A stretch of DNA of 64,000 bases from Laetmonice hystrix. Its lineage: Eukaryota. Made by a program: the position numbers and the translations under genes. Below are positions 11,021 to 51,489 of the stretch, piece after piece; the first letter of the stretch is position 1, and every line of letters begins with the position of its first letter. The notes under the pieces are model-generated. The model was not told the origin of the DNA and did not search any database. It saw only the letters and a list, made by a program, of their open reading frames with translations. Location of the stretch: the NCBI GenBank assembly GCA_965235115.1, contig OZ249437.1:50902001-50966000 (forward strand), in the 5' to 3' direction.

Positions 11021-11557
11021 TATAATGTACTTCTACAGAATTTTTACTGGAGACCAAAGATTTATTTAAAGGTATAGATTTAGTGGCAGTATGACATGAA
11101 AGAGAGTTGGAAGTAACTGTAAAAAAGGCATTAAATTCCACATGGGCCTAATTGAAATAATATGATGTAGGTGCTACCTAGCGGACGAGCACAGCACCAG
11201 GAGTTAGGCCTAAATTATACACTGTCACTTAGCAACGTGACGAAAGTTTTATGTGCTCAAGACAGTATGTGTGGATTTGCCTTGGCCACCCTTGTCTACA
11301 TATGACATGTGTTGTCATAGAGCTCGCTTCACGAGACGCTTTGTGGCTCGCTGCACATGCTATAAATATTGAAGATGAAACCTCTTTTTAGATCTATAGA
11401 TAATGGAAGTATGGGCCAGGGGTGAGGATTCACTACATGATGTCTTACATTAGTTTGTAATATGTTTTTAATCACAGAATGGTTTGTAAATATTTGTATT
11501 GGTTTCAGTACTTTAACTTGAGGCCTACAGCAGTGTAAGCGTAGGACTTTCAGAAAG

Positions 11558-13686
11558 ATGAACGTTGATGTTGTTGGATATGTTCGGCCCCCAGTCCGGG
11601 GGGAGGAGTCCCCAGTCCTTGAAATGGATGGGCCCCACAGGCTATCAGCCGCACCAGGAGGTGTTACTGTGACGTAAGTTATAAGTTATTATCATTTATT
11701 TATAAACCTTCGTTTAAATCCAACTCACTTGTTAGATCCTCAATGCAGAATAATGGGTCCTGTGAATGGTTATAGCTTCAGTTGTGTCTCCAAGGCTTAC
11801 AAACTGACAGCAAGAAACGTTGACTGTTACTGGATCATGCAGACAGGAGAGGATCCATAACAAATCTACTTCTTGAATTGTCTTTCAGTCTACAACAGAT
11901 GCACCATGCTGGGACATCATCATATGATGTCTTTCAGCAGTCTGTGGTTCCACTTCTCGATGTGTTTGTGGCAGGATTTAATGTTAGTCTGATTGTGACC
12001 GGAGAGAGTGGCTCAGGGAAGTCATTTTCTGTAGCAGGAGAAGGTGTCACCAAGACTGGTATCATCCCCCTATTTATGGACAACCTATTTACAAAGATGA
12101 GGCAAGGTTTGTAAAGCCTTTTTTTAAACAGAAACTATTTTCTCTTTGCCATTGCCAATGCAGAGATGTTGGTCAAGGGGGGAGGGCAGTCCTTGAATAA
12201 GTATATGTTATCACACCGACTCAATCTTAGTATAGATCTACATGTATGATATTCTGAGCCCTTTTTTTCAGAATTGATATTTTTAACTAGAAATTAGGCC
12301 CTTCTCCACCTTGCTTTGTATTTAGGGCATAATGATATGGGAGAAAGAATTATTATCCAGTACCCTGGTATTTATTTTATAAACAAATATCACATAGGGC
12401 CTAAGACATTTCAGGATAATTCTAAAGCATGGATCTATTACAAACCAGATGAGCGTTTATTATATGATGCATCAAGGAGAGCCGAGCAACAAGTGACATT
12501 ACAGGTATATGAAATCTACAATGAGTTGGTACGAGACCTGATGCAGACTCCTAGTCTCACCACCAACTATGTGGAGATTAGCACCTCACCTACAGCAGGC
12601 CCATATCTTAAGGTACAAATCTAGACACCCAAATATTTAATGTTTGGTAGCTTTCATATTGTTAGAGCTACAGCCCGTAGCCCTAATCTATTCTGTTTCT
12701 GATCAATGTTTTAAAGTGAAGTACATGTATATTTGTAATGTTTTCCAGATTCCCTGAGAATTACATAAATAAAGTATAAATTTTGTATTCAAAAATATTT
12801 GCAAATTGTTGACACTTGAACTCGTGTAATTGAGTCATGTTTTATTAACATAGCTTTTTCCTTTGTAGAATGGTTGTGTTGCCCCAGTCAGAAGTGCAAG
12901 TGAGGGGGAAACTTTGTTTCATCAGGCATGGGCACGACGTTCTGACCACTACACAGACTTTGGTCCTGCCCAAAACCACTCCTCAATTCTCATCTATGTA
13001 GATTTGATACTGGTGAGTTTAGAAAAGTAACACTTTCATGTTTCATTGAATGGAATAACTCAAGATCAATCAATCCGTGCCTTGTTCCTCTGTAACTTAT
13101 AGCAGACCAGTGACAGCCCACTGCCAAACAAATCACGCTTCACTCTGGTGCTGACACCTGGTGGTGAAAAACTTGGAGAGGATTCACGTCAGTTGCGTGT
13201 CCGTGAGGGTCCAACGCTCAGTAAAAGTTTGGTGGCCCTCACTCAGCTTGTGGCCGCTTTGGTCAATCAGCCCTATGCTGACAGGGTAATCAATTACAGG
13301 TGAGTTTCACTTTTCTATAGTTAGACTATTAATACAGTCATAGTGCAATGCAATAGATGATGAGATAATTGCATGTTTCAAAACGAACAAAGGTTTATTG
13401 ATCATGGCAAATTGATACCCTGTATATGAAACTATATAAGGGAAACTGATCATGTAACAAAAGGAAAACTTTCAGTAATGCTTCTATTTTTTTCTTTCAT
13501 TTTTTGTGAAGTGACTCGAAACTTACATCTCTTTTGGTTGATGAACTGGGAGGCAACTGTAAGACAAGAGTCCTCCTCTGTCTGAAACCAAGGACTGACA
13601 GTTTGCTTCTAGAACCCATCATTCGTTTCACCAGTCAGTGTACACAAATCAAGAACTTTCCCATTCTCAACGACCCATTTGCTCAG
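11558..13686 (+). other. Divergent kinesin motor domain (exons 1-6 of the fusion gene, about 337 aa)
   Basis: MNVDVVGYVRP start; VAGFNVSLIVTGESGSGKSFSVAG (P-loop); VYEIYNELVRDLM; LSKSLVALTQLVAAL; INYSDSKLTSLLVDELGGNCKTRVLLCLKP; IRFTSQCTQIKNFPILNDP (helix 6 / neck). Confidence 0.93.
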
Positions 13687-16600
13687 GTAAACAAAACGTT
13701 TACAAAAAGTTGGTAAAACTGAGTTTAAAATCATTTGAAGATTATAAAAGAAATAACAGAAACATAGCGGCTATAACTTCAGCGTGGTTTACAAAAAACA
13801 GGGTACAATTATATAATGTGACCGCTTCAACCTTTCAGCAACTTGTGACCCAGTACCGAGCTCGTGTCCAGAACCTTCAACAACAGCTAGGTTGGAACAC
13901 TGGCCTGCCAAACCCAAATCTTGCCTTTGACACTCAGGTCGAACTGAGACGGCTGCAGACTGAAAACGTAATATTGACGTCATATTTCACCCAGAAATAT
14001 ATGTGGGGTGAAACAGTAATATACTGATAATTACTAAATAAGTTATGAGTAGTAGTTAAAAAGGAGGAATGCCTTCCAATTCGGAAAGTTCTTGAGAAGT
14101 TCTTTTTGTGTGATTATTTTCAAAATGTACTTGACGTTATATCTCAGAATGTGCTAACATGATAATTTAGCTTTGGTGCCGCTAGGTGACGCTACGTGAC
14201 CAGAACGACCGCCTGCAGGAACGATTAGACCATCTTCATGATAAGTTTGGTTCATTAGCGTCTACAAAGACGGACATCTCGTCACAGCTTCTCATGACTG
14301 AGGAGGAAAAACTTAAAGTAATAACCATCAGTGAATTATGCTTCAGAAGAGATCAAATTTGTACACTGATGAAGTAACTTAGTAAGAAGGGAAAAAAATG
14401 TCTTAACTTATATGCATGACAGCAATTTTTACAAATAAATTTATGTCTCTCTCGACTCTACTTGGATGAGTAATTAGGGTATACGAGCCATAAAGCTGGC
14501 CAAAAAACAGCACAAACGACACAAGAAATAACTTTTTAATTTCAGATATCAAAAACACTAGTTGAGATGCAAATGGAGAACAACAAGCTTAAAGAAGAAT
14601 GTGAAGCCACAAGATTTGAGCTCACGAATAAAGTACGTCCAGTGTTCGCCAGAGTGCTTGTCTGGAGTTGAGACATGATGTGCAAAAATTTCTTCCATTT
14701 TAACATTAAAAAATTATTGTGGCAAAATGAGATGGTAATGCGATGATATTATGACTACAAGTAGGCGGTTCAATATGCAAGGTCTATCTGTATGAAAAGT
14801 GGTTTCATGCCAATTTGTTCTTTAACCTCTCCATTTGTCTACGTTTAAAATGTTCAATAGTTGTTATCTGTTTATCAATGGGATCTAAGTTGTTCCCCAG
14901 GTATCCTCCTCTGAAACAAACGCTTTTGGTGAAAAGAGCATTTTTGGGGTGCTGTACAATTCTTTATCTAGTTTGTGTGTAGCCATAAGAAGGTATTAGA
15001 GTAAGACGAAATCTTTGAGGATGAAACATAAAACCATTGAATAGGAATGCTAGAATTGAATGGATATGTGGTTGTCGGGCATCTGAGTTTTTAAGGTCTT
15101 TCTGCAAAAGTATAGATCAAACATATTTTTCACAGGTCTTGCAGCTTGAGAGTGATTTATTACAAATGGACAATGATCGGGAAAAACATGCCAGAGAAGC
15201 TGCTAACGTGCAGGATCAGTTTTCAGCTTTACAACGCGATCGTAAAGAACTTGCAGACGAGTATGTGACCCTGAAAGCCAACTATGCTCGCCTCAACGAC
15301 GCTCATGATCGGGAGGTTAGACGTCGGCCGACTTTACGTAATTCTAGAATCATAGACGGCGAAATTGCACTACGTCCCCAATAATGTTATTTGGTGGGGG
15401 CCATATTGCCTCAAGTATATATTTTTCTATTGAATATCATTAATTAGGCCTCTTCCTAGTCAAGATCATGTTCCCCTACCACAGTATATTATATGATTCA
15501 CTGCACATGAGAATACACATGTACATGTATCTCTTTTAACACGTCTTGCCCATTGTGAAAATACTTTGACTGGACTCTGGAAAAAATATTTCACAAGGCA
15601 AAGTATTTGCTCTAACCAAAAACAATCAGACAAAGTCTCATCTTTGCTATTATTGGGAAACGGGAAGTGCTCTGTGCGAGTGTAATTCATTGTACGTTCA
15701 GAGGCAATTTTTGCAATTTCTTTCTTGTCCGTCAGGTTGCAAAGAATTCTGAGCTGAGTGTGGAGTTGTTGAATCTGGTGAATGGGAAGGCTGCACTTAT
15801 GAAGGAAATGGAACAACTGGAACTGTCGGGTAAAAAATACGGGGACTCAAATACTGAAGTGGAGAGAGTGCGGGCCATTGTCAGTCGAATGTCTCAACAC
15901 AGGGTAAAAACACATGAAGGATTTTTGTATTCTTCACCACTTTTTAATATACTTACAGTACATGGGGTGTCTGCAGACTAAGGAGTAATGTATCCGGGGG
16001 CTGTTTTATTTTGTAATCACATTATTGATGGTATTCTTAATGTTTGAATTTGGCCACAATATTTTGTTTTACATTTCGGTTTTTAGATGGATGATCTCAT
16101 GGCATCTGATGAAGACCGACAAAATGTTGCGAAACGTGTAAGTTTTGAAAAAAGTCAGTATATATTTTGTTATCAATGCAAGTAGTAGTTTACCGAATGT
16201 ATATGAGAATAACATTGTAATCTATAAGAAAAGCTACAGTTGTTGCTTCTTTACAGTTGTTTGGGTCAACAGCACAGCTGGAGCAAGAATTGCTGGCATT
16301 GCGTACCCAGCATGGTGACCAGATGCAAAAAATGGAGAGAAGACTGCAAGTACCTCTCAGTACAAATGTATACGTTGGGTATTTTGGTATCCCCAGCAGA
16401 TGCTTTTGGTTCCTCGTGAATTGTTTTATCTTTATTTGCACCAGTATCTTCCTTTTTTCAGAAATTGCAGTCTAAAGGTTATGCCTGCTTTTACCTGATG
16501 AACTCTAACGATAAATGGTATAAGTTTGTGTGCGATTGTCATTAACCTTATCAGGGCAGACTTAAGAAACGAAGTACACGATGCTCGAAACGTGGCACGG

Positions 16601-19600
16601 GAACGGCAACAAAAGGTCTCCGAAATGAATGCCGTGAGTTGAATGAAATTGGTCTGCCTATTTACCAATACTTGATCTGACCTAGCCCAGGTTTCTTAGT
16701 GGAGCTTGAGTCGAAATTTACTGCTCAAACTCACGAAGCCTGCGTAGGCGTCTTATGCCCGATTTCCACCGAACGCGAGCGAGCGATTTGTTTTGGTGCG
16801 CGCGCTTGCGTCAAAAGTAGAAATGTAGTTGAAGAGATTTCCACCAGACGCGCGTTTACAATCCATGAGATGTTTGCTGCAATATATTACAGCGTCTGAT
16901 CACCCAGCACGCAGAGGTTGAACAACTGAAGAGTCAGAACAATCGCATGCAACACAAACTGAAAGACGCCACTGATAACTTCCGCTCCCGTCTTGTCAAA
17001 TACGTGGAAGATATTGCTGTTAGTATTACTAGTAAATCGTCCTTCATACTTCTCTTGAATTACCAGTTTGAACAGAGCCCGTAAAAATGGAGTCAATTCT
17101 TGTTAACCTTATACATGTATATACTTGTTAATATGAAAGAGTTGATATTCATACACAACTGTCGGGAAATGCATTTTCCCTAATGTTATTAATTTTGTTG
17201 CTTATATTCATGAATTGAGGCATGCCTCTACATTGAGCAAAAATTAAATGGGCCTAGCTTAAGTCTATTGTTAAAGGGGCCCCGTCAATTAAAAGGTACG
17301 TTTCATATTTGGGGGGAATTGACGGAGTCCCTTTAACCCCAAGTGGAGGGGCAAGGCCCAATATCCACCCCCGCCCCCCACGCCCACCACAGTGCGACAC
17401 TCGGGCGGCAGTGCCTGTATCTCATACAGCATTGCGTAAGCGTCGGTGGTTTTTGGAAATTTACGTTTTAGAATATGAAAATGAACGTTTGCTTAATGAG
17501 GTCTGACAGTGCGTTATGTTTGTATGCTTGGCCCGCAAGGTAACAGTATATTGTGGAGACACTCTTGGCCTTTCAATGAAATCACCTAATAAAGTGTGTA
17601 ATTATTCCTACGGAAGCAATACATGGATGGGCGGAGTGACGCAGGGCCGTCTGCTGGCCAGGAACAAATGCGCGACTATGTGCGTGGCATGCATGGAGAT
17701 CTACGTAAGGCCCATAATGTACGGGAAATGCAGTTAAGCCAGGCAGCACAACACTACAAAAACCATTTGAAGGATGTGGTGTCCACACATGAGCAGTTAT
17801 TGATTGCTTACAGGTGAGGGCTGACTAAATCTTGCTGTATAAATTGCACGTGGAGAACGCACCCAGACAGGCCTGAAATTAATAGGTTCATCTTGGCCCT
17901 GAATAAGGTAGTGGCATCGAGTCAGCATTTCTTAAAGGGTGACTCCGAGTGCTCGGAATTAGTTAGTGTCAGGGTGCTATTCAAATATTATGCCCACAGG
18001 ATTGAATTGGGGGCGGATCTAGAAGGATCTGAAAGGATCTAGTGGATTCAAGGGGGTCTAGGGGTGGGCATTTAGGGTCAGTGTGTTGAGGGGGCGGGTC
18101 TCGTGCCCCCTAGGCCTCATAGTATCAGTAGAATTTAGAAAGCAAGAAATTGGCTGGCCTTGCTTGGCGGATTATTAAGACATTTATTAATTATCGGGTC
18201 TGATAGTTCCATCTAAGATTTGTAGTCCCTTACTTTCAAGTCAACATCATCATCAGTCCCCTTTTTTACCCAGCTGTAATATCACGCTTGACCTGCTAAG
18301 AGGTCTTTACGGGGATAAGAAATACATTCAGGTTTAAACATGGATTGGTAACACCTGAGAGATCCGTGTAGATAGCTGTCAAGATGATGACTTGACAAGG
18401 GTGTATGTTTTATTTGCTGTATGGCAGAAATCTCCGGCTAAAGGTTCAGAGTGGCACAGGTGGCGGCACTGAACTGGGACCTGCCTGTGATGAGTTCCGA
18501 TTATCGGAGCCAGAATTTACCAGTGCCCATCAGAAGGAGATAGATAGATTGAGGGAGGAACTGGATCACGCTTCAAGCCAGCTGGAACGGCTGCAGTTAG
18601 GAGTAAGTGTCAGGGCTCTTGGACGTTCTTTCTTTTTTCTGAATGGAAAATGTTTTTTTTTTCTCTCTCATAATGTGTATTGTTGGTGTTGATTCAGAGC
18701 TATGAACTGGTTGTTATGGATGGTTACTTTAAAATATAGGAGCGGCAGTCAGAACTGGGTATTGGTGTACATACTTTCATTTTAGGTTTGAATCCATTTC
18801 AAAAGAAGTTTTTTTTACAACGTTCATGATTAGATAAATCTAATTATTGTTAGTGCACTGTATAGAAACGGAGAAGACTTAACTTGTATTTGCTTTTTCT
18901 TTTTTTGTAGATAATTTTAACAGGTCAGGCGACCCTTTAACCATACAACTATTATAAAAATTGAATAAGAAGTGATCCCTTGGAAGCTTAGATCTTTTAC
19001 TGGAAGAAAACAAAAGGAATATGTTGATTGAGTGTTTCTTTTTTCTTTCGGTCCCTGACAGACCAAGGCAGTAATTGGAAAAGGCGCTAGTGTTGAATGA
19101 GCGAATTTTCAATTTGCATTTTTAATCTTTCACTCTGTTACCATTTTCCCCAATTTATTTGTTTCAGATAAGAATTGATGAGAAAGCAGATACTAAAGAC
19201 AAAAGGTCTGTATTACAACGCATTGATGTTGAAGATATTTATTTCAGCTGGACGATTTTCTTTATTTTATTTTTAGTCCCATAGATTGGAAGCTACGTAA
19301 TACACACATGACTCGTATATCACTTGAACCACTAAATCAAAGCAGAATGTCAATAAAAACATCCCTTCCACTGTTGTAGCAGTCCATGTTTGGGCCTCTG
19401 GGCTGAAGTCAATAGAAAGATTGTGAGAAAAAAGTAACAATTCCTATTTGTCTTTAAATCAGTGCTACCAATCTCCTGCCTGCTTAGTTAGCAAACAGCA
19501 TGGCTTGCACAGATCGTACCATGGTGAAGACCTACTTGAATTGTAAGCAATATTTTCCACCGCACTCTTCCCACTGTTATCAGTTTGTGGCAGATGACAT

Positions 19601-22600
19601 AGGATCGATAGCTTATCTGTGTCGTCGAGGACTTGATTAGCACTGGCAGAGTGTCAATACTATTATACATTGACCGTATACAATTTACAAAGTCTTGCTG
19701 CTGGTGCTGCTGGTGTTGGCGCTGCTGGTGTTGCTTCTGCTGCTGCTGCGGCTGCTGCTGCTGCTGGTGCTGCGGCCTCTTCAGCTTCACAACATTGTAT
19801 CCACGAACAATACCACTTTCCTTTTAGGCCAGACACAACGTGCCGGGTGGCTCGATTTCAACTTATGTGAAGAATCTTCTTATAATTTTTAAGGTCAACC
19901 TGGTTGGAAACTAGATCACATGAATAAATGAGAAAACAGCAAAGAAATGAGCAAATTTATGCGGGAAAACGGGAAGCACCATCGGGGACTCTACATACTT
20001 GTATATACGGTATAGCGTTGTCCCAAAATCTGATGTTAAAAGGATGGTTCCTGGATGTTATTATCATGGTACAACCAGCATCAGTCAATGACTATAGATC
20101 TGGATTAAAAACATATACTGACGGCAATAAAAACGCATAGGACGACCGTTTCATTATGAAATCTGAATTACACATGAACATTTTGACAGCAATCTCAGGC
20201 CTAACGTCGCAGATTTCGCTTGGAGTTAGAGACGGTAGAATTATATCTATTAAAGGACGGATCATTTAGATACACAATTTTTTTTATTTTTTACACGTTT
20301 TTACGAAACAAGCTGACTCCATGTTTAAATGCTCCATGTTGCATGGAAGCCACGAATCAAAGCCTGTCTAATAAGACGCCAAATAATTCACAACAACGCG
20401 AGGTACACTACAGGGTATAATATACATGTATATAGTGAGGTGTCATTTCCATATTATATTGTACCGCCTTTGATAGCTTACTTTTTCAATGTCAATTCAA
20501 AGAATCCCTAAGTTAGCTGAAAAGCGTTTAATTTGTTGCCAGTCGACGGATGGACAGAGGCCCTGATCGGGACGGGTCGTGGACAGAACTCCGTCGTCAG
20601 ATGCGCCAGTGGTCGGAAGGCACACAGCAGCAGTTGGAGACCGAGCGAGCCCAGCTACTTACTGCCAACACCATGCTGGAAGAGGAGAACGGCCAACTGA
20701 AGAGTTACATTGACACACACCTCAAAAGGTGAGTGCGAATGATACTGGCAGGCGTTGGAATGAGCCAACCAGGTGCTGTGCAGGCTCATATTATTGTAGA
20801 TGGAATGGGACATTTTAAGGGGAATGAGTAAAAATAATTTTCAAACATGATATTGAAAAAAGAAAAGAAATACACACTGTGCAAAGCCGTCTGTACCATT
20901 CATTCAATAATGTCTAATGAATGCACCGTTAAGCACACTCAAAAGAGAGCGAGAAGACAATTATTTGGAAATAACACATTTATTTCCCTCCCGGAATGAT
21001 GAAATACCTAGGAATCTAAAAAGGGCGTAACAAGATGATTGCTGAGATAATGAGGAAAATTATTGATAGCTGTTTTTGGTCAGGTTGATGAACAGATGAG
21101 ATGAAGATACCGATAATGACATTATCAAAAGAAAATGAATGGTGAGTTTAATTGACTTGGCCGTGTGAGTGTGGGAAAACGGGGTAATTCGTTGAATTAC
21201 CAGGTAGAATGGAAACGTGTGAAAGGCAGGGGGAGTGGAGTCGAGAATGGAAACACCACTAGTGTTTACCCTAGCCATGATAATATTCTAATTATGGGCA
21301 GAATTTCGAATTTTGCCCTTTAGAAACAAGTGAATGAGGTTTGTTAAGCTTTTCATTCTTGTACCGAGAACAGAACTGGAGGCTAATATGTATTACACCT
21401 CAATGGTTCAGTGATCATCATAATTCATGTGACAGTGCAGCTGCTGTTTCCTGATTGGTCCCCACGCCTGCATGGACAATCCCACATGTCGGGTTTTATC
21501 CCTTGGACCTTAATCCCCCACTTACCTGTCCTATTCCCTAGCAGAATGAGACAATGTCATCATGTCTATTGGTTTTAACTCTCTCCCCCCCCCCCCGAGA
21601 TTTCCTGGAAATAGATCCTCTTCTGGTCGTTGCCTTATCATGAATAAACATGGCATGATTTAATTGTGGTACTGAAGCTGATGCTGCGTATCAAAACACT
21701 GAAAACTTTTTTGGCCGAAGCCAGGTGACTGTTGAACCACGCTTGGTAGGTGCTGGATGTGAACGGTGATTGAAGGCGTCTGGTATGTGAATCAACGCGG
21801 CGAATACTATTATATTAGATATACAGAACTTCATATAGACATATATCATATACTGTAACAATACTAGTGGCAAAATACACTCTCGGCTGATAGAACTGAG
21901 ACCTATTATGGTGGTCGTATATACCGGGCTAAGTCAATATTAATACTCGCATTTTGTTGGGCAGTATTTGTTTTGGTTGTTTGAAGGCCTGTTGAAATAA
22001 ATTTCTAGAATTAAGACATTTTTTTAATGACAACGTTTTCACTTTAATGTAGAATCCAGAATGCTAAAAAATTCAAAAAGGTCACGTGAAGATTTATTTC
22101 ACAGTTTAATAATGTTTTGTTTGATAATTTTTATTAACAAAACGTAATTTTTCGTCGAGTAATCAGGCGATAGAAATTTTTGTTCTTGTGTTAAGTCGCA
22201 CAAATATCCTGTGAAAATAGTTGTGATTTCAAGACTGATTCTAATGAAAACAGCAAGAACTCGTAATGTGACCTTGAAGCGGAATGCTAAATGGGATGTT
22301 TTCTTCACCTTTTTATTACTGTGGGTATTTGTGATGGTGGTAATTAGATGGCAGACAGAGATAGCTCCAGAATTATACGGAGGCTGAGCTGGAGATTCCA
22401 TCCATCACAAGGGCAGATAATCTCCTGGCTGTTGGCCGACAAATGATTCGTGAGATAGTGACATGCCCCATTGTCTGCCGTGAAGGCCGGATGACGTCTC
22501 TGTATTGTCCTTGAATACAATAAACCAGTATCCTTGTGTCCCAGGTGGCATTCATATTTATCTTGATATAAGCCATGTTTTCTCACTGCAAACCTTAACT

Positions 22601-25600: not shown

Positions 25601-28600
25601 CAATGGTTACCAGGCTGCGGAGTCTATCTGCCAAAGTCAGTGATTATAATTAGTACGGAGCTAGAGAAAACATTATCAGGGAGGTTCTCACGATAAATGC
25701 AATCTCTCTCCGCGGACCTCTGCTTCTTATTCCCGGGGGTAACTTGCAAGATTTTTCTGTCAATCACTGTCTGTGTTTTCCAACTGTGGCCAAGGGAGCA
25801 ATAGACTGGTACCTGGCTTCACTTGTAGGACTGTAATATTACATGTATCTTTAAATGTGAAGACCCTGGGCGCAATAGACCCGGGTTCTCACTTGTGTAG
25901 ACTTTCTGTAAAGTTTTAATGTTGGACTTTACCAAGAGAGCAAGCTCTGTTGGTGACGTTACTCAGAGAGAGGATATTAGAGGTTAGTTTTTCCAACCAC
26001 TGCTGGGGTCGATTGGCTGAATTTTCCGTGAGCTCTGGGTCTCTGAAGTTCCATTCACAATCGCCTTAAGTCACAACCAATGATGGCTATACATTGATCT
26101 GTATCAAAAGAAATACTCTAACATTATTAGATTTCACTTATGAGAAGGCTTTACAACCTTTGAATGTGTTTGATTTAGAGATTGACGTGATAGTCACATC
26201 TCGACAGCAGACGGCATACGTCACTCCCACGGCTATTTAACGAGGACATGTTAAAGACTGACGTTTTCCTGAATTCAACTGGAGCGCCTATAAAGGTTCA
26301 TGGAATTAATCTCATAAATGTCATTGATGCCAAACTAACGTTGAAATATAGATATATAAATTAGTTGCAAGTATTTAAACTTCAATGGCGGATATCTGTT
26401 CATCCCCGTTTATTCCGCCAGCCTGAGCCATTGCCGGCTGAGATTTTTCTGAGCGGTTTCGGCTCGTTTCCACTAAACGTTGGTACCCGTCACAGGATGG
26501 CAGGTGGCTATATCTTGGAGCTCGTGTGGCCGGGTGTGCGTGTCGGGCTAGACGTAACTATAGTTTCATGGCGGATACATCAACCAACACTGAGCAACGA
26601 CTGGCAGCCAGCCTGGGCGTCCTGATGGAAAGGTTACCAAACAACACGTAGGGGTCAGCCTCAAGCTTTTTAAATGGGTACACATGAGTATGTGTGAGGT
26701 TAGTCTGATGACTTTATTAAGTCTTAAACGGGAGTGGAAGGTCACTATGTACTGATTAGGTGCCGCAATCACTGACGTTTTATACACGCCTGGCGATTGT
26801 GAACTTGACTCATTATGACGTTCATGATACTCAGATACTTGTGAAGATGGTACGGCCCCAGGCTGAGGGTAATAGTTTAATTCTCCTCCATTGGCATTCA
26901 ATATCAATCAGATCTGTTAAGATTTGGCTGGGGTAACGATAAGTCATTAACTTGAACATGACAGTTCTTGGTACCGTTCCGCAGCATATACGTCAATGGA
27001 GATGCCACTTAACAAACGCCAGGCTGAGCCTGACAGGTTTTACCCCATGTGCCATGCTGATCTATGTGTGCATTATCCTGGTACTCGAGGCTAATCGAGG
27101 AGAGCGCTTTGATTGGCCCATCGAAAACATGGACGCAAACGTCAATGGTAGTTCCGTATCCTCCGCATTTCTCCGACAAGATACAGATTTTTTTCAATCC
27201 TTTTACAATACAAGTGTTAAATATCCTTGCTTTTCTGGAGGTAGACATATAGTCTCATCGGTCCCTAAGAGAGGCTACGGTCTGTACCTCACTCAGGGCC
27301 ATGTTGGCCACTCTCCAAGCAGAGATCGGTCACTCCGTTGACGCTGACCAACGCAACGGAAGCGGGAGTGCTTGGAGTTTAATCACTTCCTTCCGCTTGT
27401 CGGTTTTCTGACAGTAAAATTACCCATCACCTGGCCTAACATAGCGGACGCGTCTGTTTGGCAGGGGACCAGGCTATGTGTGAATATGTCATGTGTCTTC
27501 CCGGCTGTGCCAAACAGATATGTGCAGATATCACTTAACAAACGCCAGACTGAGGCTGACAGGTCTTTCCACTGTGTCCGACAGATTTAAACACCAGGGT
27601 GTCTACAGATAAGTGAATATGTAACTGAAAAACCAGACTGAGGGCGGCAGGTCTTCCCCTGTGTCCTACAGAGAAGTGAATATGTAACTGAAACACCAGA
27701 TTGAGGGCAGCAGGTCTTCCCCTGTGTCCTACAGAGAAGTGAATATGTAACTGAAACACCAGACTGACGGCGGCAGGTCTTCCCGCCGTATCCTACAGAT
27801 AAGAGAATATGTAACTGAAACACCAGACTGAGGGCGGCAGGTCTTCCCGCTGTGTCCTACGGATAAGTGAATATGTAACTGAAACACCAGACTGACGGCG
27901 GCAGGTCTTCCCGCCGTATCCTACAGATAAGAGAATATGTAACTGAAACACCAGACTGACGGCGGCAGGTCTTCCCGCTGTGTCCTACAGATAAGTGAAT
28001 ATGTAACTGAAACACTAGACTGAGGGCGGCAGGTCTTCCCGCTGTGTCCTACAGATAAGTAGATAATCACTTCACACCAGACTGAGGGTGACAAGTCTTC
28101 ATCGCTGTAGCATGCAGATATATGAAGATGTTACTTAGCATGACTGTGCCAGACTGCTGAGGGTGACATGTATTCATCGCTGTACCACACTGATATATAT
28201 AAAAGATGTCACTTAACATGCTCCAGACTGCGAGTGAAAGGTCTTTACTCCTGTTACCTACAGTTAGATCATCGTGGCTTTACCAGTCTGTTGATTTTCA
28301 ACTAGCCACATTCTCTGAGGGTAATCACATTGTTAGAGGCAGGCAGACATTAAGAAGACTGTCGTAATGTCCCATACAGTTGTCTATGAGACACAAAAGT
28401 ACTGGGATCACGTGATAATACCCATTACTAGCTTTGCACCCTCCACATTTCCCCAGTAACTTTGACTTACAAGTCGAGTCGGCACTTTTCTCTGCCCGCC
28501 TGCCAGGGGCAGGTATCTAAGGTTCAAGCTTCTCTTCCCTTCAAATTGTTCGGTGTCAGGTTGTTTGGCTTTTATAGCTTATATCGGGTGGATAAAAAAA

Positions 28601-37600: not shown

Positions 37601-40600
37601 ATTCGGAGTATAATTGTATGCTTGTAATAATGACTCGCAGCTACCTCGGCATATGCGCAGGACTTTAGTATTCTGTGTCTGATCAGTACACAAATAAAGA
37701 TGTACCGCGAAGCATACATCGACTCTTGTCGCATTAGTCCAGGTCAGACTGGTTGCCCCCAAGGTCAGGCCTGCTCAGAATCTATAGTCAGAGGGCTGAG
37801 ATCGTGTATCGAATGCTGTGAAGCAATAACCGCTAAGCTGTGCCCGTGAAACAGTAACAGGACGCAGACATTGTAACGTCAGATTTGAATATGTCGGAGT
37901 GAAGAGTATGGGTATCGGTAAGAGCATTGTCGGCGCACACCGTATGACGTTACCGGGAATAGCATTGGTAAGTCTTCTGATGGTGTAGATGACGCTGGGG
38001 GTTCTCCTGTATTAAGGGTCTGATCCACTAACGGCGATTTTCCTTGCGACGTCCATGCGATTTTGACACCACCCTTTTATTTAATGTGATTTTGAGATTA
38101 AAGGGCGTATCTCATTTCCTGAAACAGGAAAGGTCAGCAAAATCGTGCTTTTGGTTTAGGCCTAATCCTGTTTTCTTTCCCGGCCGTGTCACTTACTCCC
38201 ACCTACTGATCCCTTTCCTTCCCTTTGCTTAACATTTTTCATTGCGAGCCCCAGTTTCTGCCCTGTCCTTTCCCGCATTTCCTGTCCTGCTCTGTCTAAC
38301 ATTCAATCTTCTGCCCCTCACCCATTGTCCCCTGTCCTCTGTCTTTGACATCTCTCCGTCCCTGTCCCACCCGTCCTTCGTGTCCTGTCACCAGGAGAGA
38401 ATTTTTTTTTGGGGGGGGGGGGGGGGAGTTGGTGTACATGGTGAATCCGGAAATGTGCCGGAAGTAAGAGAGCCATCTATTCTTCTCCTAGGCTTACCAA
38501 GAGATCCATAGGCCTGTGACGGCATCTGCCTGAAGAGCTGCAGGATATCCGATCCTTACCCGAAGTTTAAACGTTTCCGATCGCCATTGAAAGAAATGTC
38601 CAAGATAAGTACAGAATAATGTCAATTGGACAGAAAAACCGAAGCAATATCAAGTTAGGGACTTACAGGGACGTAAGGGGTTAACCAATTGACTGGTCCC
38701 CGATATAACGAGTCCTGTCACACATCATTCCCAGCCCGACCGTCAGAGGCCATTTAACAGCTCTGATTCCTCTCATTCCCCGGAACGTCTTCCTGTTTAA
38801 ACATGAGAGCCATTGGAATAGCCAGTTCACTTTTATGGGTAGCCGTAAGAAATGATAAAGCACAATAATGAAGAGATAAGAAAGTAACCTACTGGTATAT
38901 ATCGGCATTTCACGAAGGGTACCGGTAAGCGATATTGCGAACTGCAATTGAGCAGTCGTCTTGTTTCCGTCTTGTTTATTCCCTTTATAAACATAAATGA
39001 GGTCATTGTGCGACGACCCGTTGTTTTTGAAAATCCTAAATTTGTCACTGGCTGTGGTGCTGGGGGCGGGGGAGGGTCATGCACCACAGGGTGTCAAACA
39101 CATCCTGTATTCTTTTATTTTCCTATATTTTAGAGGAATTCCTATTAACTCTTATAGTTTGACAGAATTCCTCAAATTACTTTCAGCTAATATTGGATGA
39201 CACATGGACTGGGGATTAAATGACATATCTTTTCTTGTTGTGACATGTAAAGTGAGTTTGATGTAATCGAAATATTATACTCTACAATGATCATACCTCA
39301 TGCACGAACATCTGCTTTTTATCATCTAAGGTTGTATCCTCGAGCGGATAAGGTTAACTTAGGTTTGCCTCGTCACACATACATGATTTAAATTGTAATG
39401 GCTTTGTAATATCTTATTTGATGTGGATGTGGAGATGGCTTTAGGTAATTGCAAGGGCGCTTTAAGTATAAATGTGGTAATTTAAGCTCCTGTATTTTCT
39501 GAATTTTCCCCATCTTCCTATATTTTGAAAACGCCAGCGTACTTGACACCCTTATATTAGTGCCCTGCCTTCAGTTTGCGTGCTGTGGAAATCACCGACA
39601 TTAATTCGTATTCACCAGAACTGTTAATCGTCGCATCTTACCACGAGGGTTTTTTCTCTCTTTTCAATGAAGGAAATGAACAGGAAATTGTGGCTACCTC
39701 GATAGAGAAAACTGAAATGTGGTCAGACAGGTCTCCCTAGTTTTCATCAGAGACCTCATAGAACGTGATCAAAATATAGTGAGAGTAGATGGGCAACTAG
39801 TGCTGGTACTAGAACTCTCATTTTTTAAAATTTGAAATGGAAAACCTCGCTATGGTAGTGTTTTTCGGTATGAAGTCGGGTCGGGTTGAGGTGGTATGTG
39901 GCTTCAAGCCATAAAACAATAGTTTAAGGGGAGTCGAGTTGAGTCGGAGTAAAAGGCGACAGGTGCGAGCAGACAGAAATGATATAGGTACAGGTTGAAC
40001 TTTAAGCTTCGGGGTATTGAAATAACCAGTTAGTTTCGTGCATTATCGTACAAAAGCATTGGTATCATTAAGTTTGAAATTATTGGCCTCGTTTCCTGAC
40101 AAAAAAAGTTTCCTCTTTGCAAGACTTTGCGTAGGCTCGGTAGTTGGAGTTGCTACAGGGGCTGTATTCACATTTTGCTGGGTCATCCAAATACCTAAAC
40201 AGATTTAGAATGCACTTCGTTGGCAAACTTAGATTGACCATTTACCCCAGCGATGGCCTGGGTCTCAGCTCAGTTATGTATGGGCTTCGCTAACAGGATG
40301 TGCAAATTAAATCTCTAAAACCTTAATCAAACGGTGTCGTTAAGAGATGTGAGAGGGGTCTATAGGTCGTCGCATTTGTGTTTTAAGTAGGCCCAGTTGG
40401 TTGTGTCGTCCAGTGGTCCACCTGCTATAGACGTGAACTGCTCGTGTAGGATGGCACCTATACAACGGCTGTTCACTTGCAGACCAACTCGTAGATCCTG
40501 CTTTAGATGAAGCAGTTAATCCCCCCCTTGGTGTTAAAGTAATATCCTAATCCCGAATTTTCTCACAGTGGTTCGGTCTTATCCTAACTGCACAGAAATA

Positions 40601-43600
40601 TGTAATCTTACCAGATTTACCGCAAAAGCTATCTAGATGTTTTTCGTTGTAATATAAAACACAAGTTAGATTTACTTCTGTTGGGTGATCGCTGTATAGC
40701 ACTCGGAACACCGACGCTGCTTCTGATTTGCTGTTTCTAGGTCATATCCGGAGGCGAAGCAGGCCTCGGATGTATGAAGCGGCCATTTTCCCAGAATTTG
40801 TGCAAACCCCAGTGAAGCGGCATCGCGCATGAACACAGATTAAATAGTCGACCCCTACGCACAGGCACATAGGCCTAGTTCAAATATAATTTCTCAGCAT
40901 AGGTATCCTTCTCGAATTTTCTATCGTGGAGACAAAACAGTCTCTTCTTCACCTGGGACGAAACCCAGATATTCTGACTTTGTAAAGTCCGACACTAGGG
41001 AGTTCTACATTTTCGGCACGGCGGCAGCGCGCGAGTTTGTTGTTTACATCCGGGTCAGTGGTCCCGACCTAGCCACCCACCCACCCCACCCCCCAGCATG
41101 GCGACCTTCGTCGTACAGCCGAGATATGACGCAGTCAATCGTGGGTGAGCCGAGTGCGCTGTTTAGATCGCTGGACGATGAGGACGCCATCTTGTTTGAT
41201 CGTCATCCAGAACTGCATAGAAAGTCACGTGAGGGAATTCCCTTCCAGTTCAAATCCAATGGCGGTGGAATCACGGCATGTTTTACTTTCTAATGATCGT
41301 GATTTTCGGTGGTACTGTAAGTAACACGTAGGTATTGTCCCTATTGGACATTGCAAATGTTTGTATACGTCTTTAGTAACATGCAGGAAGTAATATAAGA
41401 AAATCGCTCAAATTTTCCTTCATTATACGCTATTATATGGCTTTTAGTTGGATTTAGGACTAGAGGTGTTAAAGGATGATATCGTACATAGGCAACTTTC
41501 AGTTAGTGGGGACTTTCTACTCGGAATATGGAATGTCAGGTCCACTCAAGTGCTGTGATATTTAGTGCCCTTTAAGATTGTTGGTCTTTTCCAAAGGCAG
41601 AGTTATTGGTTCTTTGACTTCTTTGACTGGATTTTTCAAAATGATTCATCGTATTGTACGAGAAAACAAACTTTGAGCAACATGAGCATGGGAAGCTCAT
41701 GTTTTTCTCTGTGCTCTAACTATCCAGGCAGACATCTTCGGTTGAACGGAGGTAAAACCCCCAAAAAAATAGAAACCAAAAAAAGAAAGATTAATCTGCA
41801 GATAGCATGCCTTGGGCTTGGCATTCATTTAGCATGTGTCTGTGCATGCAACATTGAAAGGGAAGAGTTTGGTCTCATCATAATTGTCTGTGGCCATGTG
41901 CCAAGGGTTGGCTCTTTATGTCCCTCCTATAGTGCCCGTACAAAGAACAGACTACCACAGGCTTAAAGATGCCTTCCAGACAGGCAGAATAACCCAGACC
42001 CATTGGCTCCCAGGTGCTCCCCATTCTCTAGGATGTCATCTAGTTATTTCAGAACTTTCAGGAGTGAACATCATGCCATCATTAGGGCAACAAAATATAG
42101 CCTCGAGGATTCTGTTTGTAGTCTCAGCTTCTACTCTTAGTTAAATGTGAGCTTCTGTGTATAGAGTTGCCTTTTAAAAGATTCATTTTATAAGTGCTGA
42201 TTTAAAGAGGGAGGGGTTTGGGGCTATGGCTGGGAATCAGTGATGCTGGTAAAATGCCAGTTTGTGGAGATGGAGCCAATGAAGGAGCAGCTTACAGCGA
42301 CGGACGGCTCAGCCTTGGTCAGACACCTTAATAGCATTGAGTCGGCATTGATGGCGTGGAGGCGGGCGGCCACCAAGAGGGACGGGTCACTATAGACTGA
42401 AGGTCCACGGCACGAACTCACTCATTTTAATTTCGTTATTATTGTATGCTGGTCGGTCCAGACTAGCCGTGACCTGGGCGCCGGGGTGAGACAGTTCCCC
42501 TCTCAAGACTCTTGATCACGTGAAGGTGGTGTGACCGCGGCTGGGAGTAGTTGTTTTCCAGGGATGTAAATTTCAAAGTAGATTTAAAAATAGAAGAAAA
42601 AATATCCACATGTCATGCGACATCAGAACGTCTGCCATCATCAGTATCGATGATAAATATATCGTGATAATTTTAGCAATATCGGCGTACGTTTTGCAAA
42701 TTTGTTCTGTCGGTTACGTGAGCAAAGGAATTAAAGGCAGGGTAAACACCCACGGCAAGTAAGGTTTCATAGACCAAATGAAACACCAGCATTTAACTCA
42801 GGGCAATAAATGCCACAATTACGTTGTCAGAATGAAGTAATTAACGTGTAACCGCCCGATGTATGACGCCGCTGGTTCTGACCTTGACAGACTCTGCTCA
42901 CAGACCTTGTCTACACGATGTTTGGAGTCCCAACGTTTGTAAACTTCCGAGGTGTTGAACACACAAGCAGAAACAGTTGCGTCACACATCGGGCAGTTAC
43001 ATGTTAATTACTCCATTCAGACAATGTAATTGTGTCATTTATTGCCCTGAGGTAAATGCTGGTGTTTCATTTGGTCTACGCAACCTTATTTGCCGTGGGT
43101 GTTTACCCTGCCTTTAATGAATTGACTAGTAAAATTTCAACTGAGACGATGTCTTTGCTTTACCGGAAATGCCACTTTAGTTCCGGTTAAGAAACATCAG
43201 TACCGGCAATGTTACTTCATTAATGCGAGTAAAGATCAGCACTGGAGAAGATATGTGTGTTTCAAGGAAAGAGCGTTAACATTTCATCAGCTGTAATGAG
43301 CACAGTCGTTTTTGTATACTAATAGCCTGACGTAGTTAGAGGAGAATTAGATATAAGCTGACGCTGTCTGAACACTGTTAATGTACACTGGTGGAAGAGG
43401 AGGGGGCGTAACGCATAAGGGCTGACTACAGGGGACTACAGACTGTATCAATACCATATTATACATATAAGGCGTGAAAAGCGCAGTTTTTCTCCAGTAA
43501 ATCAGCAGAGTGTCGCTTATAAATAGATATATGCGCCTGGAGACCAGGCTGCGCTATAACTATAAGTAGTTGAAGGTCATTCCTGCTACGAGTCCCGACT

Positions 43601-44015
43601 GCATTCAGTCACCCCAAGAAAATTTATGATGTGTTTTGTCATAAGGTGTCTTTTATGGTTGCAAATAGACTTTTTATTATTCTGGTGTGATTATGTCATG
43701 AAATCTACAGGATCCTTTAAGAAAAGGTCCACTTCAGTATTTATGTTTCCTATGTAAATTGTTGTAAGCTATGTCAAATGGCTTATGCAGGGAAATCTGA
43801 TATAGGCATGAGGCGGTGTGGGGTGTTGGAGAAAGGCTGGGTGTGGTTAGAAACAGGTCGTTTGCCTGAACACGTATCTGAAGATGTTCTCTGTCCGTTT
43901 CAGCTATAAGGATGAGATAACTCGACTCCGTGAGATGTTGGGAGTGCGGGATACAGGCGGGGGGTTCATCAGTCCAGGGCCACGCCTCAACTGGACCAAG
44001 GACAGGGCAAAGTGA
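11558..44015 (+). CDS. CCDC78: Kinesin-motor-domain / CCDC78 coiled-coil fusion protein, 20 coding exons, about 919 aa
   Basis: Exons 11558-11673, 11889-12106, 12449-12612, 12869-13012, 13106-13299, 13512-13686, 13839-13967, 14186-14317, 14546-14632, 15136-15315, 15736-15903, 16087-16137, 16257-16345, 16555-16633, 16893-17018, 17617-17813, 18428-18602, 19168-19205, 20543-20728, 43904-44015. Sum 2760 nt, one open frame, all phases compatible (one GC donor needed at 16346). CCDC78-like motifs: ISKTLVEMQMENNKL, EYVTLKANY, NSELSVELLNLV, FRSRLVKYVEDIA, REMQLSQAA, HEQLLIAYR, SWTELRRQMRQW, YIDTHLKSYKDEITRLREML. Confidence 0.85.
19695..19790 (+). repeat. Imperfect (GCT)n trinucleotide tract in an intron of the fusion gene
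   Basis: gctgctggtgctgctggtgttggcgctgctggtgttgcttctgctgctgctgcggctgctgctgctgctggtgctgcg. Confidence 0.85.
23260..23522. mobile_element. ~260-bp interspersed element with terminal inverted repeats and an internal telomere-like (TAACCC-type) tract, copy 1
   Basis: Ends GGTGTGACAGGAATGTAGGTCC / GGACTTACATTCCGTTCACACC; internal ccctatccctaatcctaaccttaatcctaat. A similar direct copy is at 58955-59214. Confidence 0.75.
24271..24425. mobile_element. Small MITE-like inverted-repeat element
   Basis: TAAAGCCAGGAATCCATGTGTACGTA (24271-24296) matches the reverse complement of 24400-24425 with one mismatch. Confidence 0.65.
27530..28270. repeat. 63/64-bp minisatellite
   Basis: Unit acaccagactgagggcggcaggtcttcccgctgtgtcctacagataagtgaatatgtaactgaa. 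Period markers at 27628, 27691, 27754, 27818, 27882, 27946, 28010. Degenerate units on both flanks and an isolated decayed unit near 27010-27070. Confidence 0.92.
28584..29437. mobile_element. TA-flanked ~855-bp MITE, copy 2 (inverted relative to 10165-11020)
   Basis: Same TIR TCGGGTGGATAAAAAAAAACGCCCC with TA flanks. The interior is the reverse complement of copy 1 (e.g. ctgccaggtgtccaattggacacctgtttg at ~10381 vs caaacaggtgtcaaattggacacctggcag at ~29193). Confidence 0.85.
34175..35209. mobile_element. Tc1/mariner (pogo-like) non-autonomous element
   Basis: TA flanks (34173-34174, 35210-35211). TIR CAGTCAGACCCCGTTA / TAACGAGGTCTGACTG, with repeated (A)TCCGGA subterminal motifs. Confidence 0.82.
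36740..36886 (-). pseudogene. RecQ-like SF2 helicase fragment (motif 0 to motif I), probably transposon-derived (Academ-like)
   Basis: LNFGISRVKPYQVRLLQTVLSGRDTFVYQRTGQG-HQAF resembles RecQ FG...kpyQ...i..vLsGRDtfv..pTG.GKSlcyQ. The KS of Walker A appears deleted and no downstream helicase motifs were found. Confidence 0.6.
37198..37370. mobile_element. TTAA-flanked palindromic (foldback) MITE, Kolobok-like termini
   Basis: TTAA at 37194-37197 and 37371-37374. ~80-bp imperfect arms GCGACAGTCTCG...CAGTTCCT / AGCAACTT...CGAGACTGTCGC. A partial copy of the right arm is at ~7425-7508. Confidence 0.8.
42735..43113. mobile_element. TTAA-flanked foldback MITE (Kolobok-like), inside duplication copy 1
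   Basis: TTAA at 42731-42734 and 43114-43117. Long arms AGGCAGGGTAAACACCCACGGC... / ...GCCGTGGGTGTTTACCCTGCCT. The counterpart at 50071-50398 has a shorter loop. Confidence 0.85.
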
Positions 44016-46529: not shown

Positions 46530-46870
46530 AGGTGCTATTCGTCTCGCACAGAATGGCATTTCTCCTATCATACCTTGTGCACATAGTACTAGAAAAATTT
46601 CCTACCGATACCATTGGCCTGATAAACCTTCTATTAGTTTGTGTGCAGCATTTGAAACCTATCTCGGTGCGCACCGAGATAGAGCCATTTCCTATGGTGG
46701 GGCGTGTCAGGGTCTCCACAGGCCTTCTGAGAGAGCCCCATTTGTGCCGTTATCCATGAGAAATTTTGATTTCCTTTGTTGTGAATCTATTTCCATGATA
46801 GGTGGGATCACATAAACGTCAACAAAATTAAAAATAAAAAAATTGAATTTTTGTTCACGAATAGCACCCT
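46530..46870. mobile_element. TTAA-flanked MITE (Kolobok-like) forming the right end of duplication copy 1
   Basis: TTAA 46526-46529, AGGTGCTATTCGT ... ACGAATAGCACCCT, TTAA 46871-46874. Confidence 0.85.
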
Positions 46871-51188: not shown

Positions 51189-51300
51189 CTATAAGGATGA
51201 GATAACTCGACTCCGTGAGATGTTGGGAGTGCGGGATACAGGCGGGGGGTTCATCAGTCCAGGGCCACGCCTCAACTGGACCAAGGACAGGGCAAAGTGA
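51189..51300 (+). CDS. Second, identical copy of the terminal coding exon of the kinesin-CCDC78 gene
   Basis: ccgtttcag|C TAT AAG GAT GAG ... GCA AAG TGA = (S)YKDEITRLREMLGVRDTGGGFISPGPRLNWTKDRAK*. Nucleotide-identical to 43904-44015 with the same acceptor. Confidence 0.75.

Positions 51301-51446: not shown

Positions 51447-51489
<43 letters not shown>

What the first reader, a model, noticed from the sequence alone, without database searches (positions are those of the whole stretch)
11558..44015. Kinesin motor fused in frame to a full CCDC78 coiled coil: a candidate motor-linked form of a centriole-amplification protein
Seen: six exons encoding a recognisable kinesin motor and neck splice in frame (phases checked) into 14 exons of CCDC78-type coiled coil, about 919 aa in total. 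There is no stop and no large gap between the halves; those introns are only ~150-230 bp. Established: vertebrate CCDC78 is a motorless coiled-coil protein linked to deuterosome-mediated centriole amplification in multiciliated cells and to centronuclear myopathy. Inference: an ancestral or lineage-specific kinesin-CCDC78 could tether the centriole/deuterosome scaffold directly to microtubules, with the motor lost in vertebrates. I cannot confirm that this architecture is undescribed.
Basis: partly seen in the sequence, partly recalled or inferred. Interest (0 to 1): 0.85.

Follow-up and report, generated by a model that had tools for sequence, protein, structure and literature searches.

The report
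Full-length CCDC78 gene with kinesin-like head
This is one real, expressed gene for the ancestral long form of the cilia protein CCDC78, in which an altered kinesin-like head sits on the coiled coil; the same form is already annotated in many animals, so it is a normal orthologue and not a new fusion.

Summary
A 20-exon, 920-aa gene on the + strand (11558-44015) joins a kinesin-like head (exons 1-6) in frame to a DUF4472/CCDC78 coiled coil (exons 7-20). One spliced 1941-nt transcript contig runs from exon 2 into exon 16. It confirms 13 GT/GC-AG junctions, including the head-to-coil junction 13686/13839. A second contig confirms exon 1-2.

The architecture is neither undescribed nor lineage-specific. 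The model aligns end to end (44-48% identity) with more than 50 annotated "coiled-coil domain-containing protein 78(-like)" proteins of 900-930 aa that carry PF00225 and PF14739. These come from molluscs, annelids, a hemichordate and a cnidarian. They also come from vertebrates: sharks, coelacanth, lungfish, caecilians, salamanders and alligator. Two papers describe a Tetrahymena kinesin-CCDC78 protein at the ciliary tip.

The head is as conserved as the stalk, but its catalytic motifs are changed. The P-loop is intact. The switch I arginine is lost across the aligned animal members, and the switch II aspartate is lost here. I read it as a microtubule-anchoring pseudo-motor, most likely at motile-cilia tips.

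Verdict: new member of a known kind, low interest.

The parts
11558..11673 (+). Exon 1 (aa 1-39). The start ATG at 11558 is preceded by an in-frame TGA at 11519-11521 inside the transcribed 5' UTR. It encodes beta-1 'VDVVGYVRPP' of the kinesin-like head.
   Evidence: RNA contig joint 11673/11889. The N-terminus aligns with the orthologues' 'MNIDVVGRIRP'.
11889..12106 (+). Exon 2 (aa 39-112), with the P-loop GESGSGKS.
   Evidence: Pfam Kinesin 44.1 bits, E 1.8e-11. RNA joints.
12449..12612 (+). Exon 3 (aa 112-166) of the head.
   Evidence: Pfam Kinesin E 4e-4. RNA joints 12106/12449 and 12612/12869.
12869..13012 (+). Exon 4 (aa 167-214). The switch I region reads 'GPAQNHSSIL' in place of the canonical NxxSSRSH.
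   Evidence: RNA joints. Family alignment.
13103..13299 (+). Exon 5 (aa 215-280). Switch II reads 'LTPGGE' in place of DLAGSE. The alpha-4 element 'LSKSLVAL' is kept.
   Evidence: Pfam Kinesin E 3e-3. RNA joints. Alignment.
13512..13686 (+). Exon 6 (aa 280-338). It encodes L12/alpha-5 'SDSKLTSLLVDELGGN', the end of the head, and the family motif 'IKNFPILND'.
   Evidence: Pfam Kinesin E 1.6e-5. RNA joint 13686/13839 links the head to the coil.
13839..14317 (+). Exons 7 (13839-13967) and 8 (14186-14317): the neck coil and the conserved segment before DUF4472 (aa 339-425).
   Evidence: RNA joints 13967/14186 and 14317/14546. tblastn of orthologues.
14546..15315 (+). Exons 9 (14546-14632) and 10 (15136-15315): the DUF4472 / CCDC78 signature domain (aa 426-514).
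   Evidence: Pfam PF14739 at 35.3 and 41.6 bits, cut-off 26.6. RNA joint 14632/15136. It is the only DUF4472 locus in the genome.
15736..17018 (+). Exons 11-15 (15736-15903, 16087-16137, 16257-16345 with a GC donor, 16555-16633, 16893-17018): coiled-coil stalk (aa 515-685).
   Evidence: All joints lie in the same RNA contig. The ORF is continuous.
17617..17813 (+). Exon 16 (aa 686-751).
   Evidence: The start is fixed by the RNA contig's 129-nt overhang, which matches 17617 onward. The donor is set by signal and homology.
18428..18602 (+). Exon 17 (aa 751-809).
   Evidence: AG acceptor in phase 2, GTAAGT donor, and tblastn to orthologues. There is no RNA support.
19168..19205 (+). Exon 18, a 38-nt micro-exon in the variable linker (aa 810-822). 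It is inferred.
   Evidence: It is the only candidate found that restores the phase between 18602 and 20543. It has a polypyrimidine tract plus CAG acceptor and an AAG|GT donor. The alternative is a weak donor at 18595 joined to 20543, giving 905 aa.
20543..20728 (+). Exon 19 (aa 822-884): the conserved C-terminal coil '...LRRQMRQW...QLETERAQLL...YIDTHLK'.
   Evidence: tblastn at 40-54% identity to all orthologues. Alignment.
43904..44015 (+). Exon 20 (aa 884-920 plus TGA): the conserved tail 'YKDEITRLREMLG'. It is reached through a 23,175-nt intron.
   Evidence: It matches the orthologue tails 'RYKQEI.RLR..LG'. The acceptor is in the correct phase.
51189..51300 (+). Identical second copy of the last exon, inside a ~7.3-7.4 kb tandem duplication (39460-46715 / 46869-54015). 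Which copy is spliced is unknown.

Best explanation
The locus is the single-copy orthologue of CCDC78 in its ancestral full-length form. It is one gene of 20 exons encoding 920 aa.

Shown: an N-terminal kinesin-fold head (aa 1-338) is spliced in frame to a neck coil, a DUF4472 domain (aa 426-530), a long coiled-coil stalk and a conserved C-terminal motif.

Shown: the head keeps the P-loop (GESGSGKS) and the alpha4-L12-alpha5 microtubule-binding elements. It lacks the switch I arginine, as do all aligned animal family members. In this species it also lacks the switch II aspartate and the first arginine of RxRP. Even so, it is as conserved across phyla as the stalk.

Inferred: the protein dimerises through the coiled coil. 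It uses the head as a nucleotide-binding but slow or non-hydrolysing microtubule anchor, not a stepping motor. This would fix the CCDC78 scaffold to microtubule ends.

Inferred from published Tetrahymena and Xenopus/human localisation: the site is most likely the extreme distal tip (central-pair cap) of motile cilia, and possibly also deuterosomes.
For: One transcript: a 1941-nt intron-less contig in run X4 spans exon 2 to exon 16, with 13 GT/GC-AG joints that are absent from three DNA runs. The ORF is continuous.

Domains: Pfam Kinesin and DUF4472 on the exons.

Orthology: the model gives a single-HSP, end-to-end alignment at 44-48% identity to 900-930-aa CCDC78-like proteins carrying PF00225+PF14739 from molluscs, annelids, Saccoglossus, Actinia and several vertebrate groups. 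It is the only DUF4472 locus in the genome.

Motifs: the alignment with canonical KIF3B, KIF19 and Kip3 shows the changes.

Constraint: head identity to orthologues is 37-48%, against 23-43% for the stalk.

Localisation and function of relatives: a Tetrahymena kinesin with a CCDC78 domain is depleted from FAP256-KO ciliary tips and was proposed to bind central-pair microtubules (PMC10522465). Vertebrate Ccdc78 marks the extreme ciliary tip together with Ccdc33, and also marks deuterosomes (PMC12796433).
Against: There is no biochemical data on any head-bearing animal CCDC78. An intact P-loop, conserved G and E in switch II, and a family-conserved 'NH' in place of 'SR' could mean a modified but working ATPase.

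Localisation is extrapolated from a ciliate and from motorless vertebrate proteins.

The tissue source of run X4 is unknown, and its record does not state that it is RNA.

Exons 17-20 lack RNA support. A motorless isoform from an internal promoter, as annotated in alligator, cannot be excluded.
Confidence: 0.8

Rival explanations
1. The head is a working, if divergent, plus-end-directed motor. It walks the CCDC78 scaffold to the ciliary tip, or along cytoplasmic microtubules, and is not a static anchor.
For: The P-loop is intact, and the switch II Gly and Glu are kept. The neck-linker-like 'IKNFPILND' and the neck coil are conserved. The head is under purifying selection. The nearest generic kinesins by sequence include tip-acting kinesin-8 and kinesin-4 families.
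Against: The switch I arginine is absent in every aligned animal family member. The switch II aspartate is replaced here (LTPGGE) and in Paralvinella (ITPGIE). From general knowledge, mutations at these positions in canonical kinesins give rigor-like, ATPase-dead heads. Pfam scores of the orthologue heads are only 145-184 bits, against 333 bits for a canonical kinesin in the same search.
Confidence: 0.2
2. One reading: the head ties the deuterosome or centriole-amplification scaffold to cytoplasmic microtubules in multiciliated cells.
For: Vertebrate Ccdc78 marks deuterosomes as well as ciliary tips (PMC12796433; PMC10522465, citing Klos Dehring 2013).
Against: The only head-bearing relative that has been localised is at the ciliary tip. 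The deuterosome role was defined in species whose CCDC78 has no head. The family is present in a cnidarian. Whether all these animals use deuterosomes was not tested here.
Confidence: 0.12
3. These are two adjacent genes (a kinesin and CCDC78) joined by read-through or chimeric assembly, or the fusion is specific to this lineage.
For: None beyond the general caveat that a k-mer contig is not a single molecule.
Against: The head-to-coil junction is a canonical 152-nt intron removed in phase 0 within one contig that keeps a single ORF. The same collinear architecture is annotated independently in more than 50 species from Cnidaria to vertebrates.
Confidence: 0.02

Closest known systems
Annotated 'coiled-coil domain-containing protein 78(-like)' proteins of invertebrates (for example Ruditapes, Crassostrea, Pecten, Aplysia, Owenia, Paralvinella, Saccoglossus, Actinia)
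   Same: Length is 900-930 aa, with PF00225 head + DUF4472 + stalk + 'YKQEI.RLR..LG' tail. They are collinear with this model end to end at 33-51% identity and share the rewritten switch I.
   Different: This species additionally lacks the switch II Asp and the first Arg of RxRP (Paralvinella shares the former). The linker before the C-terminal coil is shorter. The last intron is 23 kb and the terminal exon is duplicated.
Vertebrate CCDC78. The short form is found in human and in Xenopus (~560 aa); the long form in shark, lungfish, salamander, caecilian and alligator.
   Same: The C-terminal 580 aa (neck, DUF4472, stalk, tail) are orthologous. The long vertebrate forms have the same head at 37% identity.
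   Different: Short-form models start at the position equivalent to residues ~371-383 of the 947-aa axolotl protein, so they lack the head. The published functions (deuterosome, extreme ciliary tip with CCDC33) were defined on the short form.
Tetrahymena thermophila I7LVY1, a predicted kinesin with a CCDC78 domain
   Same: A kinesin head plus a CCDC78-type coiled coil. It is a ciliary-tip cap-associated protein (PMC10522465; PMC12796433).
Degenerate or immotile kinesins such as KIF26A/B and KIF7/Costal2 (general knowledge)
   Same: A kinesin fold is retained for microtubule binding, with impaired or very slow ATP turnover. KIF7 acts at ciliary tips.
   Different: There is no specific sequence relationship. 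The head is about equally distant (E 1e-27 to 1e-20) from solved kinesin-1, -2, -3, -4, -7, -8 and -12 motors.

Membership tests
CCDC78 family (Pfam DUF4472, PF14739) | DUF4472 profile match above the gathering score | tested here: met
   Exon 9 scores 35.3 bits (profile positions 8-36) and exon 10 scores 41.6 bits (positions 35-104), against a cut-off of 26.6. A genome-wide six-frame search hits only this locus.
CCDC78 family (Pfam DUF4472, PF14739) | Collinear full-length similarity to proteins named CCDC78, including the conserved C-terminal coil and tail | tested here: met
   Single HSPs cover aa 1-905 of the model against 900-930-aa orthologues, all with E=0. The tail motif is aligned.
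CCDC78 family (Pfam DUF4472, PF14739) | Localisation to ciliary distal tip and/or deuterosomes | not testable with these tools
   Known only from the literature on Xenopus, human and Tetrahymena.
Kinesin superfamily (PF00225) | Motor-domain profile match above the gathering score | tested here: met
   Exon 2 alone scores 44.1 bits against a cut-off of 29.3. Exons 3, 5 and 6 match successive parts of the profile. Orthologue heads score 145-184 bits.
Kinesin superfamily (PF00225) | P-loop GxxxxGK[ST] | tested here: met
   GESGSGKS in exon 2.
Kinesin superfamily (PF00225) | Switch I NxxSSRSH | tested here: not met
   The region reads 'AQNHSSIL'. The arginine is absent here and in all aligned family members.
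Kinesin superfamily (PF00225) | Switch II DxxGxE | tested here: not met
   The region reads 'LTPGGE'. Gly and Glu are kept and Asp is replaced by Leu. Vertebrate members keep DLPGAE and molluscs have ELPGLE.
Kinesin superfamily (PF00225) | Microtubule-stimulated ATPase and motility | not testable with these tools
   This needs purified protein.
A named kinesin family (kinesin-1 to -20, for example the cilia-linked Kinesin-17) | Specific affinity of the head to one family | tested here: inconclusive
   Solved motors of many families all score E 1e-27 to 1e-20. The best database kinesins are KIF19/Kip3, KIF21/KIN-4 and KIF3B at E 1e-24 or weaker. Wickstead's Kinesin-17 members have canonical high-scoring motors. 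No full phylogeny was run.

The most novel reading that the evidence does not exclude
The CCDC78 head is an ancient pseudo-kinesin kept by selection. Its switch I arginine has been lost at least since the cnidarian-bilaterian ancestor. It anchors the ciliary-tip cap scaffold onto central-pair microtubule ends. Contrary to the published statement that the motor is absent from vertebrate Ccdc78, it persists in sharks, coelacanth, lungfish, caecilians, salamanders and crocodilians, and was lost several times independently (frogs, most amniotes, ray-finned fishes). This would give a natural with-head versus without-head experiment for how the ciliary tip is built.
Probability: 0.35. Interest if true: 0.5.

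Novelty: new member of a known kind. Interest (0 to 1): 0.25.

Why it matters
For this window the result is a well-supported annotation. It is a single-copy, expressed, full-length CCDC78 orthologue, apparently not yet in the protein databases for this species.

More broadly, the finding shows that the long, head-bearing form is the usual animal state. The well-studied human and Xenopus proteins are truncated derivatives.

Two points may interest cilia biologists. First, the head's catalytic motifs are rewritten but conserved, which suggests a microtubule anchor and not a transport motor. Second, several vertebrate lineages still carry the head, which the recent literature does not mention. 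Both points come from public annotations, not from anything unique to this locus.

Tried and rejected
1. My first guess for the exon 3 acceptor (12398) was wrong. RNA puts it at 12449.

2. A 19-exon, 905-aa model joining a weak donor at 18595 to 20543 was replaced. The 20-exon model uses the GTAAGT donor at 18602 plus a phase-fitting 38-nt exon. Neither version has RNA support.

3. The idea that the head belongs to the cilia-restricted Kinesin-17 family (Wickstead 2010, PMC2867816) is not supported. Their Kinesin-17 entries are canonical motors scoring 450-500 bits. Motif strings of the CCDC78 head were not found in their supplementary alignments, though those files are gapped and truncated, so this is weak.

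4. An X-box/RFX scan gave one near-palindromic site at 10108-10121, but the number of matches was below chance expectation. It is no evidence for ciliary regulation.

5. A search for 'DUF4472' in the paper library gave no papers. PMC12258958 (Legal 2025) is not held.

6. No run is recorded as RNA. That X4 is cDNA is inferred from its intron-less contigs.

7. The spliced protein has no reference form, so it was not submitted to the remote tools. Searches used single-exon references and orthologue ids, and the full model was analysed only in local scripts.

8. Non-animal members could not be reached with the capped searches, because animal hits fill the lists. The ciliate link therefore rests on the literature.

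9. Pfam on the larger ORFs elsewhere in the window and in the 23-kb intron found nothing.
Full report
**What is there**

The + strand between 11558 and 44015 carries one gene. I rebuilt it exon by exon from the sequence and translated it.
- The final model has 20 exons, a 2763-nt CDS and 920 aa, with no internal stop.
- Of the 19 introns, 18 are GT-AG and one is GC-AG (after exon 13).
- The ATG at 11558 follows an in-frame TGA at 11519-21.
- The N-terminus 'MNVDVVGYVRPP' aligns with the orthologues' 'MNIDVVGRIRP'.

**Domains**

Pfam on single-exon translations gives two families.
- The Kinesin motor profile matches exons 2, 3, 5 and 6, at successive profile positions 50-115, 120-160, 223-277 and 281-310. 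Exon 2 alone, at 44.1 bits, passes the gathering score.
- DUF4472 is split across exon 9 (profile positions 8-36, 35.3 bits) and exon 10 (positions 35-104, 41.6 bits). Both pass the cut-off of 26.6.

**Is it one transcript?**

No public run is recorded as RNA. However, run X4, from the same sample and study as the three genomic runs, behaves as cDNA.
- It holds 24% of the sampled words and covers exons but not introns.
- One 1941-nt contig is laid as intron-less pieces from the end of exon 2 to 129 nt into exon 16.
- Every junction has GT..AG or GC..AG ends, and the record coordinates are contiguous.
- The critical head-to-coil junction 13686/13839 lies inside this contig, and the ORF stays open through it.
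- A second contig joins exon 1 to exon 2 and runs unspliced into the 5' UTR.
- The three ~60x DNA runs show none of the joints, so a genomic retrocopy is unlikely.

It came out in favour of a single gene. Two caveats remain: a k-mer contig is not a single molecule, and minor isoforms are invisible.

**The 3' part**

Exons 17-20 have no RNA support.
- Exon 16 starts where the contig's overhang matches (17617).
- Exon 17 (18428-18602) and exon 19 (20543-20728) align to all orthologues.
- Their phases only fit in two ways: through a 38-nt exon at 19168-19205 with good signals, or through a weak donor at 18595.
- The conserved tail 'YKDEITRLREMLG...' lies 23 kb downstream at 43904-44015, with an acceptor in the right phase.
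- The tail exon occurs twice, with identical sequence. The cause is a ~7.3-7.4 kb tandem duplication (39460-46715 / 46869-54015, 97-100% identity).

**Relatives**

A search of 1.84 billion representatives with exon 10 alone returned several 837-925-aa proteins that match at the same relative position. Pfam shows that they carry both Kinesin and DUF4472.

Using the Ruditapes protein as query, about 60 clusters carry DUF4472, most of them together with PF00225. Their sources name them 'coiled-coil domain-containing protein 78(-like)' or 'Kinesin motor domain-containing protein'. They come from:
- bivalves, gastropods and a chiton;
- the annelids Owenia and Paralvinella;
- Saccoglossus and Actinia;
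- sharks and rays, lungfish, caecilians and axolotl.

My model aligns to these as one HSP over its whole length at 44-48% identity. The ESM Atlas has a 230-member cluster with Kinesin in 100% and DUF4472 in 94% of members. The genome has no second DUF4472 locus. No listed hit was flagged as the window's own protein, so this species' copy seems not to be in the database.

**Vertebrates**

A second search used the C-terminal half of the axolotl protein.
- The head is also annotated in Pleurodeles, Latimeria, further sharks and alligator isoforms.
- Frogs (including both Xenopus species), turtles, birds, lizards, bichir, sturgeon, paddlefish and gar have 550-575-aa models without it.
- The short models begin at the position equivalent to residues 371-383 of the 947-aa axolotl protein, just behind the head and the start of the neck.

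So 'vertebrate CCDC78 is motorless' is true for the studied species but not for vertebrates as a whole.

**Literature**

- Legal et al. 2023 (PMC10522465) list a Tetrahymena predicted kinesin, I7LVY1. It 'also contains a CCDC78 domain', is depleted from ciliary tips of FAP256 knock-outs, and is proposed to bind central-pair microtubules in the cap.
- A 2025 Nat Commun paper (PMC12796433) places vertebrate Ccdc78 with Ccdc33 at the extreme distal tip of multiciliated-cell cilia, as well as at deuterosomes. It remarks that the Tetrahymena relative has a kinesin motor 'absent from vertebrate Ccdc78'.
- I found no paper on the head-bearing animal proteins.

**State of the head**

I aligned the head with orthologues and with canonical KIF3B, KIF19 and Kip3.

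| Motif | Canonical | This gene | Orthologues |
|---|---|---|---|
| P-loop | GQTxxGK[ST] | GESGSGKS | GE[ST]xSGK[ST] in most aligned members |
| Switch I | NxxSSRSH | AQNHSSIL | NH[AS][ST]-type; arginine missing in all aligned members |
| Switch II | DLAGSE | LTPGGE | ELPGLE (molluscs), DLPGAE (vertebrates), ITPGIE (Paralvinella) |
| RxRP | RxRP | YVRP | kept in most |

- The alpha-4 element 'LSKSLVAL' and the L12/alpha-5 element 'VINYSDSKLTSLL..LGGN' are well kept.
- A family-specific 'KNFPILND' precedes the neck coil.
- Head identity to orthologues is 37-48%, equal to or higher than that of the stalk at 23-43%. The head is therefore under constraint and is not decaying.
- Against solved structures it is about equally distant from many kinesin families, at E 1e-27 to 1e-20.

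From general knowledge of kinesin mechanochemistry, loss of the switch I Arg and the switch II Asp predicts a head that binds nucleotide and microtubules but turns over ATP poorly. That is an inference, not a result.

**Mechanism proposed**

I propose a coiled-coil dimer whose two kinesin-fold heads act as microtubule anchors. They would hold the DUF4472/stalk scaffold, and presumably a CCDC33-type partner, at microtubule ends. The site is most likely the central-pair cap of motile cilia.
- Shown: gene structure, transcript continuity, domain content, orthology, motif state and conservation.
- Inferred: dimerisation, weak catalysis, site of action and partner.

**Verdict**

It is a new member of a known kind. 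The residual interest lies in the conserved pseudo-motor character of the head and in its patchy retention among vertebrates.

Noticed in passing
window 39460-46715 and 46869-54015: There is a tandem duplication of about 7.3-7.4 kb at 97-100% identity. It includes the gene's last exon, which therefore exists twice with identical sequence (43904-44015 and 51189-51300). Whether this is a real duplication or a haplotype/assembly artefact is not resolved.
   Followed up: partly
window 16622-16818 and 17213-17400: These stretches in introns 14 and 15 have k-mer depth of about 1450-8500 in the DNA runs, against about 30-80 elsewhere. They are high-copy interspersed repeats.
   Followed up: no
window 27599-28108; 55483-55843; 61201-61595: There are three tandem arrays: 64 nt x 8 (inside the 23-kb last intron), 37 nt x 9.8, and 61 nt x 6.4.
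   Followed up: no
window 16346 (intron after exon 13): This is a GC-AG intron. Its use is confirmed by the spliced contig.
   Followed up: yes
related proteins P0081-P0095, P0157, P0163, P0170 versus P0158-P0274: Public CCDC78 models keep the kinesin head in sharks and rays, coelacanth, lungfish, caecilians, salamanders and alligator. Frog, turtle, bird, lizard and basal ray-finned fish models lack it. This is at odds with the statement in PMC12796433 that the motor is absent from vertebrate Ccdc78.
   Followed up: partly
window 12028 and 12030 (exon 2, the codon two residues after the P-loop): The variants T>A and T>C occur together in run X3 and in the cDNA run X4. They change Ser to Thr (GKSFS to GKSFT), the residue most orthologues have. 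This is likely an allelic difference.
   Followed up: no
window 10108-10121: A near-palindromic RFX/X-box-like site (GTTGCCATAACAGC) lies 1.45 kb upstream of the ATG. The number of such matches in the window is not above chance.
   Followed up: partly
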